From positions 2,666,001-2,730,000 of the forward strand of contig CM074814.1 of assembly GCA_037447605.1 (NCBI GenBank): a DNA stretch of 64,000 nt. The letters are read 5' to 3'. The position numbers were made by a program, and so were the translations under genes. Below, one piece after another: positions 16,392 to 48,899 of this stretch. Source of the DNA: Zygnema circumcarinatum SAG 698-1b. Lineage: Eukaryota > Plantae > Zygnematophyceae. The number at the start of each line of letters is the position of its first letter. Position 1 is the stretch's first letter. The notes below the pieces were generated by a model. It was not told where the DNA came from, made no database searches, and saw nothing but the letters and a program-made list of their open reading frames with translations.

Positions 16392-19300
16392 ATGGAGCGT
16401 TTTGCCATGGAGCGGCTGCCAGCTGGCGCCCTCAAGCGCTGCCACGTTGCAGAGCACGAGACTATGGCGGCGCACGCCGTGGGCGCAGCCGTGTGGGCGA
16501 AGGTGAGGCTGGAAAAAGGGTTCGGGACCGGGGCAGGGTTTAAGGGCTCAGGGTTTTTTTGGGGCCATGATCTGGGTCTGGGTAATTAGGGTTTCGGGGT
16601 TTCTAGAAGAAGCAAGATTTTAGGGTTAGTTGGGTTTGTAGGGTTTGAAGGTTTGTAGGGTTTGTAGGGTTTTAGGGTGTGTAGGGGGCGTCACGGTGAA
16701 GAAGACCTCTTTCAAGTTACAAACTTAGATGTTAGAAAAACTGGTATCTAAACAAACAGCCAAATAATAGAACAAAAACGAAGAAGAACTGTGAATTCTG
16801 ATGCTTTTTTTTCCCGTTTTCTGTTCCGTTTTCCCGTTCCGTTCAGTGGGGATGCAGGTGGTGGGCCGGCGTCCTTGCTTGCGAAAAAGACGCCAACCTT
16901 AAGGCAGAGTTCCGGAAGCCGTGTCCTAATAACTCGTCCTCCTCCGAACACGCGCTCATATACTTCGTGCGCACGGCGTACCTCGCGTGGATTCCGCTTA
17001 AGAATCTGTTGCCCATAACGGAGGCTCCATGTCCGTTGGCGGAGGAGAGCTGGGAGGTAGGGAGGAGCCTGACTGCAGATCCAAGAAATTCTCCGAAGTG
17101 GGAGATGCTGCACCGATTGGGGGACTGCATGTTGGACATAGCGGACTGCATACATGTGAAGGTACGGTTTCAGTTTCAGTTTCAGTTTCCGTTTTACTTT
17201 TAGTTTCTGTTTTACAAAGTGTGTTAGCTATGCACATCCTCTTTTTCAGCAGAATGTGAGAGAAGTAGAAGTAGAAGTAGGAGTAGGAGTAGAAGTAGAA
17301 GTAGAAGTAGAAGTAGAAGTAGAAGTAGAAGTAGAAGTAGAAGTAGAAGTAGAAGTAGAAGTAGAAGTAGAAGTAGAAGTAGAAGTAGAAGTAGAAGTAG
17401 AAGTAGAAGTAGAAGTAGAAGTAGAAGTAGAAGTAGAAGTAGAAGTAGAAGTAGAAGTAGAAGTAGAAGTAGAAGTAGAAGTAGAAGTAGAAGTAGAAGT
17501 AGAAGTAGAAGTAGAAGTAGAAGTAGAAGTAGAAGTAGAAGTAGAAGTAGAAGTAGAAGTAGAAGTAGAAGTAGAAGTAGAAGTAGAAGTAGAAGTAGAA
17601 GTAGAAGTAGAAGTAGAAGTAGAAGTAGAAGTAGAAGTAGAAGTAGAAGTAGAAGTAGAAGTAGAAGTAGAAGTAGAAGTAGAAGTAGAAGTAGAAGTAG
17701 AAGTAGAAGTAGAAGTAGAAGTAGAAGTAGAAGTAGAAGTAGAAGTAGAAGAAGAAGTAGAAGTGGAAGTAGAAGTGGAAGTGGAAGTGGAAGTGGAAGT
17801 GGAAGTAGAAGTGGAAGTGGAAGTAGAAGTGGAAGTGGAAGTGGAAGTGGAAGTAGAAGTGGAAGTGGAAGTGGAAGTGGAAGTGGAAGTGGAAGTGGGA
17901 GTGGGAGTGGGAGTGGGAGTGGGAGTGGGAGTGGGAGTGGAAGTGGAAGTGGAAGTGGAAGTGGAAGTGGGAGTGGGAGTGGGAGTGGGAGTGGGAGTGG
18001 GAGTGGGAGTGGAAGTGGAAGTGGAAGTGGGAGTGGGAGTGGGAGTGGGAGTGGAAGTGGGAGTGGGAGTGGAAGTGGAAGTGGAAGTGGAAGTAGAAGT
18101 AGAAGTGGAAGTAGAAGTGGAAGTAGAAGTAGAAGTGGAAGTGGAAGTAGAAGTAGAAGTAGAAGTAGAAGTAGAAGTAGAAGTAGAAGTAGAAGTAGAA
18201 GTAGAAGTAGAAGTAGAAGTAGAAGTAGAAGTAGAAGTAGAAGTAGAAGTAGAAGTAGAAGTAGAAGTAGAAGTAGAAGTAGAAGTAGAGGTAGAAGTAG
18301 AAGTAGAAGGATCTAAACATGCTTTTCAAAGACTTGGTTTAATGGATGTGCAATTTTAGGTTTTTCAGTATGCAGCCATATGCATAGACATATGTACATA
18401 ATTATTTGTTTTCTTTGTATCGCGGTGCCATGTGACAGTGTACGGTGCAGAGCATGCAGCAGTTGGCGCCGTGGCACGATCTTGCACTCGAAGTGTGGAA
18501 ATGCAAATCGTACGAGGAACTTGGAAGGCATCTCAAGCGCTTAGAAACTGTACACACCCTTGCTCCCTCTCCCTCCCTCCCTCCCTCCCTCCCTCCCTCC
18601 CTCCCTTCCTTCCTCTCTCCCCCTCTCTCTCGCTACCTCTCGCTCAATGTCTCTGTTTGCTTGTTGTATCTTGAAGATAATCTCTCATATTACAAACTTG
18701 AGCGTTTGGAATTGCAAAGATATTTCAACCTTTGAATGCCAATCTTTCTAACCTAGTCTTAGGTTGCTCTCTCTCAAAACGCGGCAGTTGTTTCTTCGAG
18801 AGTACATGACCCAAAGTTGGAAAAGCGGACTGGAGACGTGGAAGAGGAAATGTGACGAAGCCAATACTGTCGTCGATCTTGAGATCCTCATCAAAGTAAG
18901 CCTCGAATTTAGGGTTTTTGGGGTTTTGGGTTGGAGAGTCTTTACAATTTTCTTGTTGTATGTGTTAAGAAACATTGTATCTAAACTTAGATTTCTAATT
19001 GAACCCTAAATCTATTCTTCAAAGCCTTAAACCTGGAAGTTTAATCCTAAACCTAAAGTTCAAACCATAGACTCTTAATTCTACAAGCTTACCTTATCTC
19101 TAGACCTTTGACTTTCATTCTGAACCTCAAACCAGACTCTCTGAATCCCAAACCCACTCCCTAACTTCTCAAAAGATATAGAAACTAAAAAAATGTTAGG
19201 ATGCACTTTTGGGGTTTCTAGCAACTGAGAAAGGGAGTGGACCTGGATCGAGTGAATGCGGTTTGGAGTTCAAGCAGCGACCAAAGTGAGGAGTGGGACC

Positions 19301-42843: not shown

Positions 42844-44382
42844 ATGGCCCCCCGAGCGAAGCTGACGAGCTATGAGGTCCAGCGGCAGATGCAGATCGAG
42901 AATAACAAGAAGCGCTTGCAGGTTTGTCTCTGTATTTTTCTTTCTTTCTCAGAAAAAACATCTTTCAGAATGGTTTTTTCAGCACTTTTTTCACATTTTC
43001 TTGGAATTATTCCTTTTAAATCCTTTTATTCCAACTTAATTTCTGTCATTTGTGGATGGTTGTAACTCAATTTGTTGGTGTTTGCTTTTAGGAGATGGGA
43101 GTGATGGAGCTGAAAGAGGAGCTGGCGATGGCCAAGAAGCCAATTGAGCGGCGGACGCATGGGAAAAAGGTGGAGAGGGAGAGGGAGAGGGCGGAGGGAG
43201 AGGGAGAGGGAGAGGGAGAGGGGGGAGAGAGAGGGAGAGGCGGAGGGGGGAGGGAGAGGGAGAGGGAGAGTGGGGAGGGAGAGGGAGACGGGGAGGGAGA
43301 GGGAAAGGGAGGGGGAGACGGGGAAGGGATAGGAAGAGGGAGGGGAGGAGGAGGAGGGAGAGGGAGTGGGAGAGAGGGAGCGAGAGGGAGAGGGAGGGGA
43401 GACGGGGAGGGATAGGAAGAGGGAGGGGGAGGAGGGGGGAGGGAGAGGGAGTGGGAGAGGGGGGAGGGAGAGGGAGTGAGAGGGGGAGACGGGGGATGGA
43501 TAGGGAGAGGGAGGGGGAGGAGGGAGGGAGAGGGAGTGGGAGAGGGGGAAGGGGGAGGGAGAGGGAGAGGGAGAGAGAGACGGGGAGGGAGAGGGAAAAG
43601 GGGGGGGGGAGGGAGAGGGAGAGGGAGACGGGGGAGGGATAGCGAGAGGGAGGGGGAGGAGGGGAGGGAGAGAGAGGGGAGGAGGGAGAGGGAGGGAGGG
43701 AGAGGGAGAGGGAGAGGGAGACGGGGAGGGAGAGGGAGAGGGAGGGAGAGGGAGAGGGAGGGGAGACGGGGGAGGGATAGGGAGAGGGAGGGGGGAGGAG
43801 GGAGAGGGAGAGGGAATGGGAGAGGGGGAGGGAGGAGGGAGAGGGAGAGGGGAGAGGGAGAGGGAGAGGGAGGGAGGGAGGGAGGGAGGAGGGGAGGGAG
43901 AGAGGGAGAGGAGGGGGAGGAGGGAGAGGGAGGGAGAGGGAGGAGGAGGGAGGGAGGGAGAGGGAGTGGGAGAGGGGGAGGGAGGAGGGAGAGGGAGGGG
44001 GAGGAGAGGGAGGGAGAGGGAGAGGGAGAGGGAGAGAGGGAGAGGGAGGGGGGAGGAGGGAGAGGGAGAGAGAGGGAGGGAGGAGGGAGGAGGGAGGGAG
44101 AGGGGAAGGGGAGGGAGAGGGAGAGGGGACGGGCGGTAGGGGTGGAGATGGGGCAATATTGATAATGAACGGGAGACTGGAGGGGGAGAGAGAGGGAGAG
44201 TGGGAGGGTGGGTAGGGAGGGAGATGGGCGGAGAGGGAAAGAGGATCGGAGAGTAGGGAGGGTGGAGAGGGACGGAGACAGGGAGAGGATGAGGGGAGAG
44301 GGGGAAAGAGACCTTGGGAGGGAGGGGGTGTGGTGAAAGAGGCCGGAGAGGCGATGGGGGAGAGGTACTTTGTCAGTCTCTC

Positions 44383-44452
<70 letters not shown>

Positions 44453-46705
44453 CGTTCCTTTGTCTGATTTGAATTTCTTTTTTCTGGACAGCGGCCGATT
44501 CCGGAAGCACTTGTATCGCAGCGAAAATCTGCCCGGATGGCGGCGATGCCAATGAAGCCATCCTATCGAGAGGTACACTGTAGTTAATATTTCACCTTTT
44601 GTAAATTAAAAAAAAAAAAAAGGAGAGTAGTACTTCCATTGTACTTCCTTTGGAGAAATCTCTTTTACAGCGACCACTTTCAGGGGGAAATTTATGCTTG
44701 AACTCTCACCCCATTTGGGTACCTTTGCAGATGGAAAACTTGGTTTCTCGAACTCCTCGACAAAGCAGGTGAAGAGATTTTTCATTGATTTCATGCCCCC
44801 CCTTTCTCTCTCTCCCTCCCTCCCTCTCTCTCTCGCTGTCTCTGCTCTGTCTCGTTCATTCTCTCTCGCGCTCCCTCCCTCCCTCTCTCTCTCTCAATCT
44901 CTCCCTCTCTCACTCTCTATCGCTCTCGCTGTCGCTTTATTTCCATCCCTTACTCGTGCTCTCCCTTCCTCTCAATTTCTCTCTATGTATCTGCAGTCTG
45001 TGTAGTAGTATATCTATGTACCTAATCGTTCTTTACATTCATTCTTTCGCCCATTTTTTCATATGATCCAACGACTTATTCCTAAGTTGGTCCTTAAGAG
45101 AGCAGNNNNNNNNNNCCCCCCCCCCCCCCCCCCACACCCTCCCATAACCAGAATAACTCGAAACCATCATAACACATAACCCTAAAATCCCAAAAAACGC
45201 AAAACGTCAAAAAACCCATTTGTACCCCATTCTGAACCGTTTGACCCAAAAACTGCCACACTCTCGAAGACCCCATTTAGACCCCATTTTTATCCCACCT
45301 TCCTCTGACTGAATTCCCACCTTTCCCCCCCCCCTTTATTCAATCTTTGCAGTTTCCAGTCCTCTGACAGAGATAGAGCCCCTCCCTATCTGAGAGACTT
45401 CATTTCAACTGAACACGCAGAAGCTGCACAGAGAGCCGCGCTCTCATTGGCTGAGGACCTCACGGTTCCATGCATGATTAAACAGATGGTCCCCTCAAAT
45501 GTTTCGGGCTGTTTCTGGCTGGTAATTCCTCTAAACCACCTCTCGCTCTCTTCCTCTCTCCCTCTCTCCCTCTCTCCCTCCCACCTCTCTCTCCCTCTCT
45601 CTCCCTCCCTCTCTCTCCCCTCCATCGCTCCCCTCTCTCTCTCCCGTCTCCCTCTCCTCTCTCTCTCTCTCGCTCTCTTTTCGTTCCCCCTCTCTCTCTC
45701 CCTCTCTCTCTGTGCAGCGCTGCGGAAGGACGGTACAGGTCGGCAGAGGTCCCTCAGGCGGCGGTGGAGGAGGCAAAGCAGGCAGCCATGGCGGCTGCAG
45801 CGGAGAGGGAGAGACCCTGTCTTGTGCAGGAGGTGGTGCCCTCCCAAATGTCGGGAGGGTTCTGGATGGTGTGTGCGTCTGGTTGCTAACTCTCTGTCAC
45901 TCCTTCCCTCTCTCCCTCTCTCTCTCTCTCTCTCTCTTTGTCTCTTTCACTCTCTCTCTCTCGCTCTCTCTTTCCCTTTCTCTTTCTCTTCCTCTCTCTT
46001 TCTCTTCCGCTCTCTCCCTCTCTCTCTCTCTCTTCCTCTCTTTCTCTCTCTCGCTCTCTCCACTTTTTTTGTAGCATGTTTAGTATGTATCGATATCCAG
46101 ATACATGGATATGCCCATCGTTTTTACATTTTCCATTTTCTTTTTACAATTTGGTCGTTTGATTCCATCATCTTTCTGTGACAAGAAACTGGAAATTCTC
46201 CTAAATGCAAACCGCCGTTTCCGTTGCAATTCCCCTCCATTCCCATACCCGCTTGTGTTTGCATGTAACTTTCAATTTCTCTCCCCTTTTAGAAAAAACT
46301 CTCAAGACGAACCCCCGTTTCCATTCCCCATCCCCTTTCTCTACTTTTTCATTTCAATTTCAACCCTTTTGGGCTTCCTGGTTGCCTGGTGGGTCGTCAA
46401 ATCAACCCCAACTTGAACCCCAACATGAACCCCAATAACATGAACCCCAACAACATGAACCCCCACATGAAAATTAGGGTTTAAGAGCGCGGTTCTGCGA
46501 GCAGCACATGCCCCCCGCGGAGGCCCTCGTGGTTCTCGAGGACGCGGGGGGGCGGGAGTGGGAGGCCGTCTACAAGGCGCACAAGAGGGCGCTCAGCGGC
46601 GGCTGGCGAGGGTTCGCACTCGACCACCGCCTGGACAAGGGAGACGCGCTGCTATTCGAACTTGTGGAGACGCACCGGATGAAGGTGGGAGAGGGTCTCT
46701 CTCTC

Positions 46706-46745
<40 letters not shown>

Positions 46746-47721
46746 CCCCTCTTTCTCTCTCACTCTCTCCCCCTCTTTCTCTCTCACTCTCTCTCTCTCT
46801 CCCTCCACTTGTTCGCTTTGGTCACGGCGCTCGCTTCGCTCTCCTCTCTCCTCTCTCTTCCGTCCCCCTCCCCCTTCCCTTCCTCCCCTCCTTCCCCCCC
46901 CCCTCGCCCACTCCCCCCTTCTCCCTTACTCCTACCCCCTTTCCTCCTCTCCCCTCCTTCCTCCTCCCTCCCTCCCCTTTTCCTCATTCCCCTATCCCCC
47001 GTTTGCCCCTCCGCCCTCCCCACCCCACTTTGCCCCACCTCCCTCTCTCCCCTTCCGCCCTCCCCCTTCCCCTCCCCCTCCCGTCAGGTGGTGAACTCGC
47101 TCGCATGCTGCCATGCGCTCTGTCCCTCTCTCTCTCTCTCTTTCTCTCTCCTTGTCTCTCTCTCTCGATCCCTCCCCCAGTCTCTCTCTCCATCTCGCTC
47201 GTCTCTCGCTTTCCCTTCCCCAACACGGCTACTCCCACTCCCCACCTCTCCCGTTCGTTTGTGTGTGATGCTGCCTTCTCTTCCCATATCAACCCTCCCT
47301 TCTTTCCTCTCTCTCTCACAGGGTCCCTCCCTCTAAAGAGCCTGCCTTCCTCCCCCCTCTCCCTCCCAAAAAAACAAAACAAAACAAATCTCAACCTCCC
47401 TATTTTCTCCTCTCTATTCTCCTCCTCTTCTCCTCTCTATTTTTTCTTGATTCGAACTCTTAAAAGGTGCACATATTCCGAGCTGCGGAACAACCGGCGG
47501 CCTTGCAAAGCGGCTCCATGGAACCCCCGTTACGGAAATCCGTTGCAACTGATTCTGAAGAATATCGTTATGAAAGAACTGTTTTCACGGTCAAGTCCCG
47601 AAAGGAAAAAGGCGATGAGGAGGAAAAAAGAGGCAAAAAAAGGGGAAAAACTCTAGGGCAGGTTAAGGAGGGAAGGACGGAGCAGCTTCAAAAAAAGGCA
47701 AAAAAAAGCAAAAAAAGATAA
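42844..47721 (+). CDS. B3-domain transcription factor (REM/VRN1-like, At3g19184-type) with duplicated alternative exon 5
   Basis: Exons: 42844-42921, 43092-43169, 44492-44572, 44731-44768, [45371-45521 or 45718-45868], 46478-46684, 47467-47721. Motifs: YEVQRQMQIENNKKRLQ|EMGV, RKSAR..PSYRE, MIKQMVPSNVSGCFWL|GLRARFCEQHMP, LSGGWRGFALDHRLDKGDALLFEL..MK|VHIFRA. Confidence 0.9.
45371..45521 (+). other. B3 gene alternative exon 5A (151 nt, phase 2 to 0)
   Basis: GACAG|A..CTG|GTAATT; encodes DRAPPYLRDFISTEHAEAAQRAALSLAEDLTVPCMIKQMVPSNVSGCFWL. Confidence 0.85.
45718..45868 (+). other. B3 gene alternative exon 5B (151 nt, phase 2 to 0)
   Basis: TGCAG|C..ATG|GTGTGT after a long pyrimidine tract; encodes AAEGRYRSAEVPQAAVEEAKQAAMAAAAERERPCLVQEVVPSQMSGGFWM. 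Confidence 0.8.
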
Positions 47722-48899
47722 AGTCTGGGAAAAAAATAATGTTTTTAAAAACAAAGGAGTCAGCTTGGGAGGGGTGGAAAGGAGTAAAGAAAGTATTTTT
47801 CAATAGTAGGGATGGTGAAGATGGAGTGCAAATGGGGTACATGCGAGATCACATGTTAACATAGTTTTTAGCTTCCAGACATCAGTTTTTAGTTTCAGGC
47901 TTTAGGTTGAGTTTAGTTCGCTGTTTCACCTTTTCAGATTTTAGTTTTCAATCTTTATTTTTTTCATTTTTCCGTTGCTAGTTTGGCTGTTTGTATTCTA
48001 TAAGGTTATTTTGACATCCAAATTTGGGTAGATTTTCAGTGACTAGTGATCCGCACGGTTTCAGACAAGGGACTTAGGGTTTAGGGTTTGAGACATTTGA
48101 AATTTCAAGGATAAGGGTTTCCAAAAAAGTGTTTTAGGGTTCTGTTCCATGCCGTCAATACAAAATTTTTAAGAGAAATCTCCTCACTCTGTCCCATTAC
48201 ATTATTGTGCGACTCCACGAAGAGGTCGAGCATAGGCTCCCCTTCCCTCTCCCTCCCTCTCCCTCCCACTCCCTCCCTCTCCCTCCCTCTCCCTCCCCCT
48301 CCATCCCTCTTCCTCCCACCCCCTCCCTCTTCCTTTCCCTCCCTCTCCCTCTCCCTCCCTCTCCCTGCCTCCCTCTCCCTCTCCTCCTTTTGCCTGTCCA
48401 CACTACATTCTACTTCCTTCCTATTCCCTAAAAATAATTGCAAAAATGTCCCAAAAATGAGGGAATTATTGAACCGCCGTTTGGAGGCGGTTAAACGAAG
48501 GGGAGGGGATGGGCGACCTCCAATAGAGCGCAGAGGGAGGAGAGAGAGGCGAAGATTGCAGGGCAGCGTGCCGACTCAAGGAGGGAGAGGGACGGAGACA
48601 AGAGGGGGAGAGGGAGAGCGAGGGTGAGGGAGAGACAGAGGGAGAATGAGACGAGGGGAAGGCAGGGGTGGGGGGGGGAGGGAGGGGGGATGGAGGGGAG
48701 GGAGTGGGCAAGGGAAATAGGTGGAAGGATGAATGATGGCGCGGGGGAGGGGGGACGGAGGAAGAGGGAGATGAAGGGAGGGGGGGGGGGGAGGGAGAGG
48801 GAGAGGGAGAGGGAGAGGGAGGAGGGAAGAGGGAGAGACGGGGAGGGGAGGGGAAGGATAGCGAGAGCAAGGGAAACATAAATTTACGCTTTTAGGGTT

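What the first reader, a model, noticed from the sequence alone, without database searches (positions are those of the whole stretch)
45371..45868. Mutually exclusive tandem exons that swap the first part of a B3 DNA-binding domain
Seen: exon 5A (45371-45521) and exon 5B (45718-45868) are both exactly 151 nt, enter in phase 2, leave in phase 0, have canonical AG/GT sites and no stops. They align without gaps over 50 aa: ..AEAAQRAALSLAEDLTVPCMIKQMVPSNVSGCFWL versus ..VEEAKQAAMAAAAERERPCLVQEVVPSQMSGGFWM. Either one joins exon 4 to GLRARFCEQHMP in frame, whereas including both or neither shifts the frame. This is the classic mutually exclusive exon signature, which is considered very rare in plants. 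Established: the swapped segment covers the helix preceding the domain, strand beta1 and the following loop, which contacts DNA in B3 structures. Inference: one locus makes two B3 factors with different specificity (KQ/NV/C versus QE/QM/G), a splice-switched transcription factor that I do not know from streptophytes.
Basis: partly seen in the sequence, partly recalled or inferred. Interest (0 to 1): 0.85.

Follow-up and report, generated by a model that had tools for sequence, protein, structure and literature searches.

The report
Conserved either-or exons in B3 gene
A transcription-factor gene of a plant-lineage (probably zygnematophyte) alga carries two ancient sister exons, and each mRNA uses only one, so one gene makes two versions of the DNA-touching arm of its B3 domain; this kind of splicing is rarely documented in the plant lineage.

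Summary
Exons 5A (45371-45521) and 5B (45718-45868) are homologous, in phase, and precede a single exon carrying the rest of a B3 domain.

- **RNA evidence.** RNA-derived contigs from four public runs show exon 4>5B, and two of them also show 5B>exon 6. This is the main mRNA. One run also shows exon 4>5A and 5A>exon 6. No 5A>5B joint was seen.
- **Conservation.** Two other genomes carry the same A-then-B pair before their exon 6: an unnamed ENA contig and Closterium sp.
- **Orthology.** All B-type exons form one clade (97/95). A-type exons resemble the single exon of land plants.
- **Selection.** Between species, exon A is as constrained as the constitutive exon 6 (pN 0.24 vs 0.23, with pS saturated).
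- **Distribution.** A lycophyte locus and 80 metagenome loci have only one such exon.
- **What is swapped.** The segment is a helix, strand beta1 and the N-arm loop. One A/B-specific column aligns with base-contacting ARF1 H136 and VAL1 I307.

Verdict: an ancient, selected, mutually exclusive exon pair. It is a new member of a known kind. Different DNA specificity of the two isoforms is inferred, not shown. Use of 5A rests on two low-depth contigs in one run.

The parts
42844..42921 (+). Exon 1 with the start codon. It encodes the N-terminal 'SYE..R....EN.KR.QE.G' motif typical of this B3 clade.
   Evidence: ATG and GT donor read from the sequence. Homologous to exon 1 of L002 (tblastn E 3e-5) and to the N-termini of the HMMER hits. 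The boundaries are inferred, not seen in a laid contig.
43092..43169 (+). Exon 2
   Evidence: The loose end of RNA contigs upstream of exon 3 in X1, X20 and X12 matches 43138-43163 uniquely. AG/GT flanks.
44492..44572 (+). Exon 3 (81 nt)
   Evidence: Joint 44572>44731 in all four runs.
44731..44768 (+). Exon 4 (38 nt, ends in phase 2). It is the common upstream partner of 5A and 5B.
   Evidence: RNA contigs join it to 45718 in X1, X20, X11 and X12, and to 45353 in X12. L002 has a 38-nt exon at the same place.
45353..45521 (+). Exon 5A, the 'A-type' or canonical N-arm exon. The RNA-supported acceptor is at 45353 (169 nt). The positionally conserved acceptor at 45371 gives 151 nt.
   Evidence: In X12: joint 44768>45353 (depth 2.8), and a 186-nt contig covering 45349-45522 that continues with the first 13 nt of exon 6 (depth 5). 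Against L002 exon A: pN 0.24, pS 0.74. Scores 32.6 bits on the N-terminal HMM built from homologues.
45522..45717 (+). Intron between 5A and 5B (196 nt, mostly CT repeats).
   Evidence: Sequence. No 45521>45718 joint was found. The equivalent intron is 49-52 nt in L002 and 2254 nt in Closterium.
45718..45868 (+). Exon 5B, the 'B-type' or derived N-arm exon (151 nt). It is the predominant choice in the runs examined.
   Evidence: Contigs exon 3-4-5B-6 in X1 (607 nt, depth 28) and X20. Exon 4>5B is also seen in X11 and X12. It belongs to a B-type clade with L002, Closterium, Mesotaenium and two transcripts (97/95).
46478..46684 (+). Exon 6 (207 nt, phase 0 to 0): the rest of the B3 domain, the common downstream partner.
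   Evidence: Pfam PF02362, E 2.4e-13. Joints 45868>46478 in X1 and X20, and 5A>46478 in X12. L002 has a 207-nt exon at the same place.
47467..47721 (+). Exon 7: the last B3 strand (VHIFRA), a basic tail and the stop codon. The 3' UTR runs to at least 48100.
   Evidence: Contig pieces 46477-46681 and 47464-48100 lie on the same records. Sequence, ORF.
45423..45435 (+). Arm inside exon 5A of a 13/13-nt complement to the 5B acceptor. A candidate, unproven element that could hide the 5B acceptor.
   Evidence: the repeat finder pair I3. Duplex energy -38.4 against shuffles of -22.9 +/- 3.9, with 0 of 500 as low. Not found in L002 or Closterium.
45706..45718 (+). The other arm: the end of the polypyrimidine tract, the AG, and the first base of exon 5B.

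Best explanation
**Gene.** It spans 42844-47721 on the + strand. It has seven coding exon positions and a 296-codon ORF (295 aa). It encodes a single-B3-domain factor of the plant clade that has an N-terminal 'SYEE.R..R.EEN.KR' motif.

**Exon pair.** The fifth exon position is occupied by two ancient sister exons. One is chosen per mRNA.
- A-type (5A) keeps the canonical sequence found in land plants (..K.MV.S.VSGCFWL).
- B-type (5B, ..PSQMSGGFWM) is a derived version.
- In the runs examined 5B is the default and 5A is a minor, run-specific choice.

**What the exon encodes.** It encodes a linker, the helix in front of the domain, strand beta1, a short helix and the loop up to beta2. This corresponds to the 'N-arm', which together with the C-arm makes the base contacts in solved B3-DNA complexes.

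**Inferred function.** The locus yields two factors with the same body and different N-arms. These would differ in DNA affinity or specificity. The B form might alternatively be a weaker-binding, competing form.

**How exclusivity is kept.** Productive exclusivity follows from the reading frame, because each exon is 1 mod 3. Skipping both gives a stop at the second codon of exon 6. Including both scrambles the rest of the domain. How double inclusion is physically avoided probably differs between species:
- in relative L002 the A-B intron is only 49-52 nt (steric exclusion, inferred);
- in this genome a 13-bp complement between the body of 5A and the 5B acceptor is a candidate.

**Shown:** anatomy, both splice forms, conservation, selection, location in the fold.
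**Inferred:** functional difference, regulation, mechanism of exclusion.
For: **Anatomy and homology:**

**RNA:**
- exon 4>5B in four runs;
- 5B>exon 6 in X1 and X20;
- exon 4>5A (45353) and 5A>exon 6 (13-nt overhang identical to 46478-46490) in X12, at depth 2.8-5 against 13.9 for 5B;
- no 5A>5B joint.

**Conservation:** L002 and Closterium L003 have A then B then exon 6. All have AG/GT flanks, are open, and are 1 mod 3.

**Orthology:** the six B-types form one clade, 97/95.

**Selection, window vs L002:**

| Exon | pN | pS |
|---|---|---|
| A | 0.24 | 0.74 |
| Exon 6 | 0.23 | 0.76 |
| B | 0.36 | 0.88 |

**A is canonical:** it scores 32.6-35.9 bits on an HMM built from 41 other B3-clade homologues (those named are land plants), against 1-18 bits for B. 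46 homologues score higher with 5A and 20 with 5B.

**Single exon elsewhere:** lycophyte L004 and 80 metagenome loci.

**Fold:**
- AlphaFold model of a homologue, pLDDT 90. The exon border falls after the loop, at the start of beta2.
- Foldseek top hit VRN1 B3, followed by B3-DNA complexes.
- In the profile alignment the A/B-specific Cys/Gly column falls on ARF1 H136. H136 contacts bases (PMC7533888). By my own register against the RAV1 alignment, not a tool result, the same column corresponds to VAL1 I307. The lysine of beta1 corresponds to VAL1 K297, whose alanine replacement impaired specific binding (PMC5934628).
Against: - Use of 5A rests on two short, low-depth contigs from one run of unknown type. 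The 5A>exon 6 junction has only a 13-nt overhang.
- Contigs drop rare variants, so the absence of a 5A>5B joint is weak evidence.
- About half of the 5A-containing signal in X12 is contiguous with the upstream intron. This could be unspliced RNA or a different start site.
- X11 and X12 read through the 5B donor into the intron. Part of what was laid is therefore pre-mRNA or DNA.
- No transcript with an A-type exon was found for any relative. The exception is the Closterium gene model, whose evidence base is unknown. Protein searches for 5A fragments found nothing.
- No DNA-binding data exist for this clade. Its nearest solved relative is VRN1 B3, which as far as I recall binds DNA without sequence specificity.
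- Double inclusion ends in the last exon, so classical NMD would not remove it.
Confidence: 0.78

Rival explanations
1. 5A is a dead or decaying duplicate of 5B (or the reverse), and its rare inclusion is splicing noise with no function.
For: 5A has zero depth in two of four runs and low depth in the others. No 5A-containing protein fragment exists in the protein collection.
Against: Exon A is as constrained between the window and L002 as the constitutive exon 6 (pN 0.24 vs 0.23, with synonymous sites saturated). It keeps length, phase and both splice sites in three genomes. It is closer to the family consensus than 5B. Closterium's gene model uses the A-type.
Confidence: 0.03
2. 5A is used mainly as part of an alternative first exon. 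Transcripts would start inside intron 4 (around 45117-45350) and run into 5A. They would make an N-terminally truncated B3 protein, or a non-coding regulatory RNA, rather than a true internal either-or choice.
For: Contigs contiguous from 45117/45145 into 5A occur in X11 and X12, and a fragment 45131-45299 occurs in X1. Their depth is similar to that of the spliced 4>5A joint.
Against: A spliced 44768>45353 joint exists. The intron segment next to the gap and poly-C is repetitive (depth 170-1000 at 45020-45143), and X11/X12 also hold other introns of the gene, so unspliced RNA explains it. The conserved phase relation with the 38-nt exon 4 in L002 argues for an internal exon.
Confidence: 0.08
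3. The pair is a regulatory, unproductive-splicing device. The choice among 5A, 5B, both, none or a retained intron mainly tunes the amount of one functional protein, not its kind.
For: X11 and X12 read through the 5B donor, with a stop after 6 codons at 45887-45889. Skipping both gives an immediate stop.
Against: A pure dosage device does not need protein-level conservation of both exons, nor type-specific residues kept across species. The two roles can coexist.
Confidence: 0.08
4. Assembly artefact: 5B or 5A belongs to a paralogue collapsed next to the gap at 45106-45115.
For: A 10-N gap and a poly-C run lie in intron 4.
Against: 5A, 5B and exon 6 lie on the same gap-free stretch. RNA contigs join exon 4 to both exons across the gap. 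Independent contigs of two other organisms have the same layout without gaps. Only one exon 6 is present.
Confidence: 0.01

Closest known systems
Homologous tandem-duplicated mutually exclusive exons of animals (tandem exon duplication as described by Kondrashov & Koonin 2001 and Letunic et al. 2002, cited in PMC3266260; ATE1 exons 7a/7b, PMC7797038; criteria of WebScipio/Kassiopeia, PMC3923563)
   Same: Neighbouring sister exons of similar length, the same phase and conserved splice sites. One is used per mRNA. A sub-domain is swapped while the rest of the protein stays constant. Both copies are conserved across species.
   Different: This case is in the plant lineage and lies inside a DNA-binding domain. 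No conserved competing RNA structure was found. The A-B intron length is not conserved (49-52, 196 and 2254 nt).
Arabidopsis FLM/MAF1 mutually exclusive exons (beta/delta isoforms; PMC3266260)
   Same: An internal either-or exon choice in a plant transcription factor that changes its properties.
   Different: According to PMC3266260 the FLM 3' exon is a cryptic exon found only in MAF1-3, so it is recent. It lies in the I-domain, not in the DNA-contacting part. Here the exons are clear paralogues, both conserved across distant species.
Picea abies DAL19-clade MADS-box genes with mutually exclusive first exons encoding the MADS domain (PMC6243048)
   Same: Alternative exons that encode alternative versions of the DNA-binding domain of a plant transcription factor.
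   Different: Those are first exons and imply alternative promoters. Here the exons are internal, share both flanking exons, and replace only the N-arm of the domain.
VRN1 B3 domain (PDB 4i1k) and the land-plant B3 proteins sharing the N-terminal 'SYEE..EN.KR' motif (e.g. Thalictrum KAF5199381.1, Diphasiastrum KAJ7539304.1)
   Same: The same domain and fold. The same intron position after ..FWL in the lycophyte gene. The A-type exon resembles their single exon.
   Different: They have only one such exon. The function of this clade is not known to me.

Membership tests
B3 DNA-binding domain (Pfam PF02362) | Profile match above the curated threshold | tested here: met
   Exon 6 alone scores 50.3 bits against a cut-off of 30.1, matching profile positions 20-88. 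Both spliced isoforms match a clade HMM end to end, at 135 and 127 bits.
B3 DNA-binding domain (Pfam PF02362) | Pseudo-barrel fold with an N-arm and a C-arm | tested here: met
   Tested on homologue P0007, not on the window's own spliced protein. AlphaFold pLDDT is 90. Foldseek top hits are VRN1 B3 (TM 0.76/0.85), then the ARF, TEM1, NGA1 and VAL1 B3 domains.
B3 DNA-binding domain (Pfam PF02362) | Binds DNA | not testable with these tools
   No binding data are available. Only positional homology to contact residues of ARF1 and VAL1 (PMC7533888, PMC5934628).
Mutually exclusive exon cluster (homologous, tandem) | Adjacent exons with sequence homology, similar length, the same phase and canonical splice sites | tested here: met
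   Lengths are 151 (or 169) and 151 nt, both 1 mod 3, with AG/GT flanks. Homology E 1e-7 within the window.
Mutually exclusive exon cluster (homologous, tandem) | Each exon is found spliced to the same upstream and downstream exons in separate transcripts | tested here: met
   5B: exon 4>5B in four runs, 5B>exon 6 in two. 5A: both junctions in one run (X12), at low depth and with short overhangs. The evidence for 5A is thin.
Mutually exclusive exon cluster (homologous, tandem) | Both exons are never (or only unproductively) joined in one mRNA | tested here: inconclusive
   No 45521>45718 joint appears among contigs of four runs, but contigs drop rare variants. Joining both shifts the frame.
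Mutually exclusive exon cluster (homologous, tandem) | Both exons conserved in other species | tested here: met
   L002 and Closterium L003 have the same order and phase. B-type clade support is 97/95. pN is well below pS for both exons.
Mutually exclusive exon cluster (homologous, tandem) | A defined exclusion mechanism (steric, U2/U12 incompatibility, competing RNA structures, NMD) | tested here: inconclusive
   The donors are ordinary GT and not U12-like. The 49-52-nt intron occurs only in L002. The 13-bp 5A/5B-acceptor complement occurs only in the window. The double-inclusion stop lies in the last exon.

The most novel reading that the evidence does not exclude
The closest algal relatives of land plants have kept a regulated splice switch since before Closterium, Mesotaenium-like lineages and this organism diverged. 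The switch exchanges the base-reading N-arm of a B3 transcription factor. One gene thereby yields a canonical (land-plant-like) and a lineage-specific DNA reader, with different targets in different conditions or life stages. Land plants have only the canonical exon. It would be the first deeply conserved, homologous, internal mutually exclusive exon pair inside a plant-lineage DNA-binding domain.
Probability: 0.4. Interest if true: 0.78.

Novelty: new member of a known kind. Interest (0 to 1): 0.6.

Why it matters
Homologous mutually exclusive exons are a classic way for animals to diversify channels, receptors and enzymes. In plants they have mostly been predicted rather than shown. The 2014 Kassiopeia survey predicted 166 such exons in 66 Arabidopsis genes. 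It found no internal one annotated and none described in the literature (PMC3923563).

This case has direct splice evidence for both forms, and the pair is conserved across genomes. Purifying selection on both copies is measurable. The location is also interpretable, since the swapped part is the arm of the B3 domain that reads DNA.

It offers a natural experiment on how B3 N-arm residues set DNA recognition. It also marks a character that separates these algae from land plants, and it gives gene annotators a concrete template. Current models of the relatives each contain only one of the two exons.

Tried and rejected
1. **Protein word-index searches.**
   - Exon 6 was searched with a length trick and 5A on its own. 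Both found nothing.
   - The gene's own protein is therefore absent from that collection. No extra 5A transcripts could be recovered.
2. **Looking for isoform pairs in relatives' clusters**. Only single isoforms were present.
3. **Genomic loci for Mesotaenium (P0091) and Selaginella (P0066).** Neither is on record.
4. **Metagenome scan for more loci with the pair**.
   - It returned 80 loci, all with one exon. None was an obvious additional zygnematophyte.
   - This is useful only as a negative control.
5. **Conserved competing RNA structures.**
   - Inverted-repeat scans and duplex energies were run in three species.
   - Only a window-specific 13-bp complement stood out. Many other pairs are CT/GA low-complexity matches.
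6. **U12-type incompatibility.** Rejected from the donor sequences.
7. **Steric exclusion as a general mechanism.** Rejected, because the A-B intron is 196 nt here and 2254 nt in Closterium.
8. **NMD as the guard against double inclusion.** Weakened, because the stop falls in the last exon.
9. **Misassembly and the dead-duplicate reading.** Both rejected (see rival explanations).
10. **Steps not done.**
    - The spliced isoform proteins were not sent to Pfam, AlphaFold or the database tools, because they have no single reference. A homologue was folded instead.
    - The organism was not identified.
Full report
**1. The observation**

Reading 44400-46900 and translating confirms the two segments. 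45371-45521 and 45718-45868 are each 151 nt. Each is preceded by AG, followed by GT, and open in frame +1.

Their last 34 residues align without gaps: 14 identical, 26 similar, pairwise E 4e-11. In a six-frame search of the whole window each exon finds the other as its only significant match (E 1e-7 and 5e-5). The first 16 residues are not alignable (pN 0.68). 5B is open in all three frames, so its lack of stops carries little weight.

The next exon (46478-46684) is present once in the window. It matches Pfam B3 positions 20-88 (E 2.4e-13, 50.3 bits against a cut-off of 30.1). The alternative exons therefore supply profile positions 1-19.

**2. Gene model**

RNA-derived contigs and the sequence give the following coding exons.

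| Exon | Coordinates | Note |
|---|---|---|
| 1 | 42844-42921 | ATG |
| 2 | 43092-43169 | |
| 3 | 44492-44572 | |
| 4 | 44731-44768 | 38 nt |
| 5A or 5B | 45353/45371-45521, or 45718-45868 | one per mRNA |
| 6 | 46478-46684 | rest of the B3 domain |
| 7 | 47467-47721 | stop codon; 3' UTR beyond 48100 |

Frame consequences:
- Either exon alone gives a 296-codon ORF (295 aa).
- Skipping both stops at 46482-46484.
- Including both runs out of frame through 5B and exon 6 and stops only at 47550-47552, in the last exon.
- Retaining the 5B-exon 6 intron stops at 45887-45889.

The N-terminus (MAPRAKLTSYEVQRQMQIENNKKRLQEMG) carries the motif shared by the nearest homologues. I recall this clade from land-plant B3 proteins, and it is visible in the hits.

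**3. RNA evidence (Logan contigs of four runs, the only laying allowed)**

Main form:
- The joint 44572>44731 is in all four runs.
- Exon 4>5B is in all four runs.
- 5B>exon 6 is in X1 and X20. In X1 a single 607-nt contig at depth 28 carries exon 3-4-5B-6.

Minor form:
- 5A has zero depth in X1 and X20.
- In X12 there is a joint from exon 4 to 45353 (GT..AG, depth 2.8).
- Also in X12, a 186-nt contig (depth 5, against 13.9 for the 5B contig) covers 45349-45522 and continues with GTTTAAGAGCGC. Together with the ambiguous G, this is the first 13 nt of exon 6.

No contig joins 5A to 5B.

Caveats:
- The run types are unknown.
- Contigs show presence, not absence.
- X11 and X12 also hold intron sequence. 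One stretch is contiguous from 45117 into 5A. Another runs through the 5B donor to 45896. A third covers 46071-46681. They therefore contain pre-mRNA or DNA.

**4. Relatives**

An exhaustive HMMER search with exon 6 found about 1200 relatives but not the window's own protein. The closest include:
- P0091, Mesotaenium endlicherianum ME000287S04922;
- P0006, Closterium sp. Naga37s-1;
- P0007, a transcript contig;
- P0005, on a 6992-nt ENA genomic contig.

On that ENA contig (L002) and in the Closterium locus (L003), tblastn found two exon-5-like segments in tandem upstream of exon 6, A-type first. The table gives the exon anatomy.

| | Window | L002 | Closterium L003 |
|---|---|---|---|
| Exon 4 | 44731-44768 (38 nt) | 2018-2055 (38 nt) | not defined |
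| Exon A | 45353/45371-45521 (169/151 nt) | 2255-2405 (151 nt) | 12388-12631 (244 nt) |
| Exon B | 45718-45868 (151 nt) | 2455/2458-2611 (157/154 nt) | 14886-15054 (169 nt) |
| Exon 6 | 46478-46684 (207 nt) | 2840-3046 (207 nt) | starts at 15795 |
| A-B intron | 196 nt | 49-52 nt | 2254 nt |

Every one of these alternative exons has AG/GT flanks, is open, and is 1 mod 3 in length.

**5. Orthology and selection**

Over the last 18 residues:
- A-types are 61-72% identical to each other.
- B-types are 61-67% identical to each other.
- A and B within one genome are 39-50% identical.

A maximum-likelihood tree of 22 columns puts all six B-types in one clade, 97/95. The six are the window, L002, Closterium, Mesotaenium, P0007 and P0132. 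A-types fall outside it among the land-plant sequences. The alignment has few columns, so only this one branch is trusted.

Nei-Gojobori proportions between the window and L002 are shown below.

| Exon | pS | pN |
|---|---|---|
| A | 0.74 | 0.24 |
| Constitutive exon 6 | 0.76 | 0.23 |
| B | 0.88 | 0.36 |

Both exons have therefore been under purifying selection since the species split, and A is as constrained as exon 6.

An HMM of the N-terminal 24 residues was built from 41 other B3-clade homologues. The four algal B-type or Closterium proteins were left out, and the homologues that carry names are land plants. It gives 32.6-35.9 bits to the three A-types and 1-18 bits to the B-types. In a separate comparison, 46 homologues score higher with 5A and 20 with 5B. 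So A is the canonical version and B the derived one.

**6. Distribution**

The lycophyte Diphasiastrum has the same intron position after ..FWL but a single exon.

A profile scan of metagenome contigs gave 80 loci. From their sequences they look like land-plant host DNA, moss-like sequences and green picoplankton-like contigs. Each has one exon-5-type segment before its exon 6 match. Second hits lie more than 4 kb downstream, so they probably belong to neighbouring paralogues.

With the data available, the pair occurs in 3 of 3 loci that carry B-type sequences and nowhere else.

**7. Where the swapped part sits**

- An AlphaFold model of P0007 residues 104-236 has pLDDT 90.2.
- In that model the alternative exon encodes:
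  - a disordered linker,
  - a helix (model residues 16-31),
  - beta1 (37-41),
  - a short helix (44-47),
  - a loop (48-52).
- The exon border falls at residue 53, at the start of the next strand.
- Foldseek's best match is VRN1 B3 (4i1k, TM 0.76/0.85), followed by B3-DNA complexes of ARF, TEM1 and VAL1.
- A family profile aligns without gaps to ARF1 123-141 and to RAV1. The column that is Cys in every A-type and Gly in every B-type falls on ARF1 H136.
- H136, with G137, contacts bases and changes conformation between TGTCTC and TGTCGG (PMC7533888).
- By my own register against the RAV1 alignment, the same column is VAL1 I307, a base contact. The beta1 lysine is VAL1 K297, a backbone contact whose alanine replacement impaired the specific complex. 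[quoted passage not shown]
- Type-specific differences are [H/N][V/I] against QM, and C against G. All lie in this loop.
All other B-types keep the lysine.

**8. Mechanism of exclusion**

- The donors are ordinary GT sites, so U2/U12 incompatibility is not indicated.
- The A-B intron of L002 is far shorter than its neighbours (49-52 nt against 199 and 228 nt). That would fit steric exclusion, but this is not conserved.
- In the window a perfect 13-nt complement links 45423-45435, inside 5A, with 45706-45718. The second arm is the end of the pyrimidine tract, the AG and the first base of 5B.
- The duplex energy is -38.4, against -22.9 +/- 3.9 for dinucleotide shuffles, with 0 of 500 as low. Control acceptors are not significant.
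- This was noticed post hoc and has no counterpart in L002 or Closterium. It remains a candidate only.
- The reading frame guarantees that only single inclusion is productive. Double inclusion would not be a classical NMD target.

**9. Comparison with what is known**

- Tandem exon duplication giving mutually exclusive exons is a well-known kind (references in PMC3266260; PMC6071210; PMC7797038).
- In Arabidopsis, 166 such exons in 66 genes were predicted. No internal one was annotated or described at that time (PMC3923563).
- Two transcription-factor cases exist in plants. FLM/MAF1 has a recent cryptic 3' exon in the I-domain (PMC3266260). The Picea DAL19 clade has mutually exclusive first exons that encode the MADS domain (PMC6243048).
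- Searches for mutually exclusive exons together with Zygnematophyceae, or with B3 domains, found nothing relevant.
- I therefore class this as a new member of a known kind. It is notable for its depth of conservation, its place in the DNA-reading arm, and its lineage.

**10. Limits**

- The organism was not identified. The affinity to zygnematophytes rests on the shared B-type exon and on the named homologues.
- Use of 5A rests on one run.
- Regulation, protein-level existence and DNA binding are untested.
- The same scan noted another candidate pair of tandem exons, in an RGLG gene, elsewhere in this genome (s1-321699). I did not check it.

Noticed in passing
window 45869-45896 and 46071-46477: In runs X11 and X12 the contigs that carry exon 4>5B read straight through the 5B donor into the intron. 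Exon 6 is contiguous with the 3' part of that intron. X1 and X20 splice 5B>exon 6. Retention would end the protein 6 codons after 5B, with a stop at 45887-45889. This could be run-specific intron retention, or simply pre-mRNA or DNA in those libraries.
   Followed up: partly
window 45351-45371: Two in-frame acceptor AGs lie 18 nt apart in front of 5A. The RNA contig uses 45353. The one matching the 151-nt exon A of relative L002 is 45371. This may be an alternative acceptor that adds 6 residues (FQSSDR).
   Followed up: partly
window 45020-45143: Contig depth jumps to 170-1000 next to the 10-N gap (45106-45115) and the poly-C run. A loose end in X11 at 45178 leads into telomere-like CCCTAAA-containing sequence. 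This looks like a repeated element inside intron 4. TTTAGGG-like units also occur in the 3' UTR around 48075-48095.
   Followed up: no
window 43170-44491: Intron 2 is a 1.3-kb, almost pure GA/GGA low-complexity tract (G+C skew up to +0.97). The other introns of the gene are CT-rich. This is a strand-asymmetric microsatellite expansion.
   Followed up: no
L003 (Closterium) 12727-12753, 15185-15232, 16242-16852, 17213-17583: The Closterium locus holds further partial copies: two relic ends of exon-5-like sequence (..RGCFWL|gt and ..PGDFWL|gt), four tandem copies of the 3' half of exon 6 (..GFAMDQELDAGDAVVFEKM..), and four VHIFRAA[DE] starts. The annotated protein P0006 strings several of them together. 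This may be local tandem duplication, further alternative exons, or an assembly or annotation artefact.
   Followed up: no
L002 2406-2457: The intron between exons A and B of this relative is only 49-52 nt, against 199 and 228 nt for its neighbours. There are two in-frame acceptor AGs 3 nt apart (NAGNAG-like) at 2453-2457.
   Followed up: partly
P0091 (Mesotaenium ME000287S04922), residues about 214-227: The annotated protein has a 13-residue insertion within the exon-6 part of the B3 domain (PSCRALATCRPGG) that no relative shows. It is probably a mis-called splice site in the gene model.
   Followed up: no
If that is real, this genome may use the mechanism more than once.
   Followed up: no
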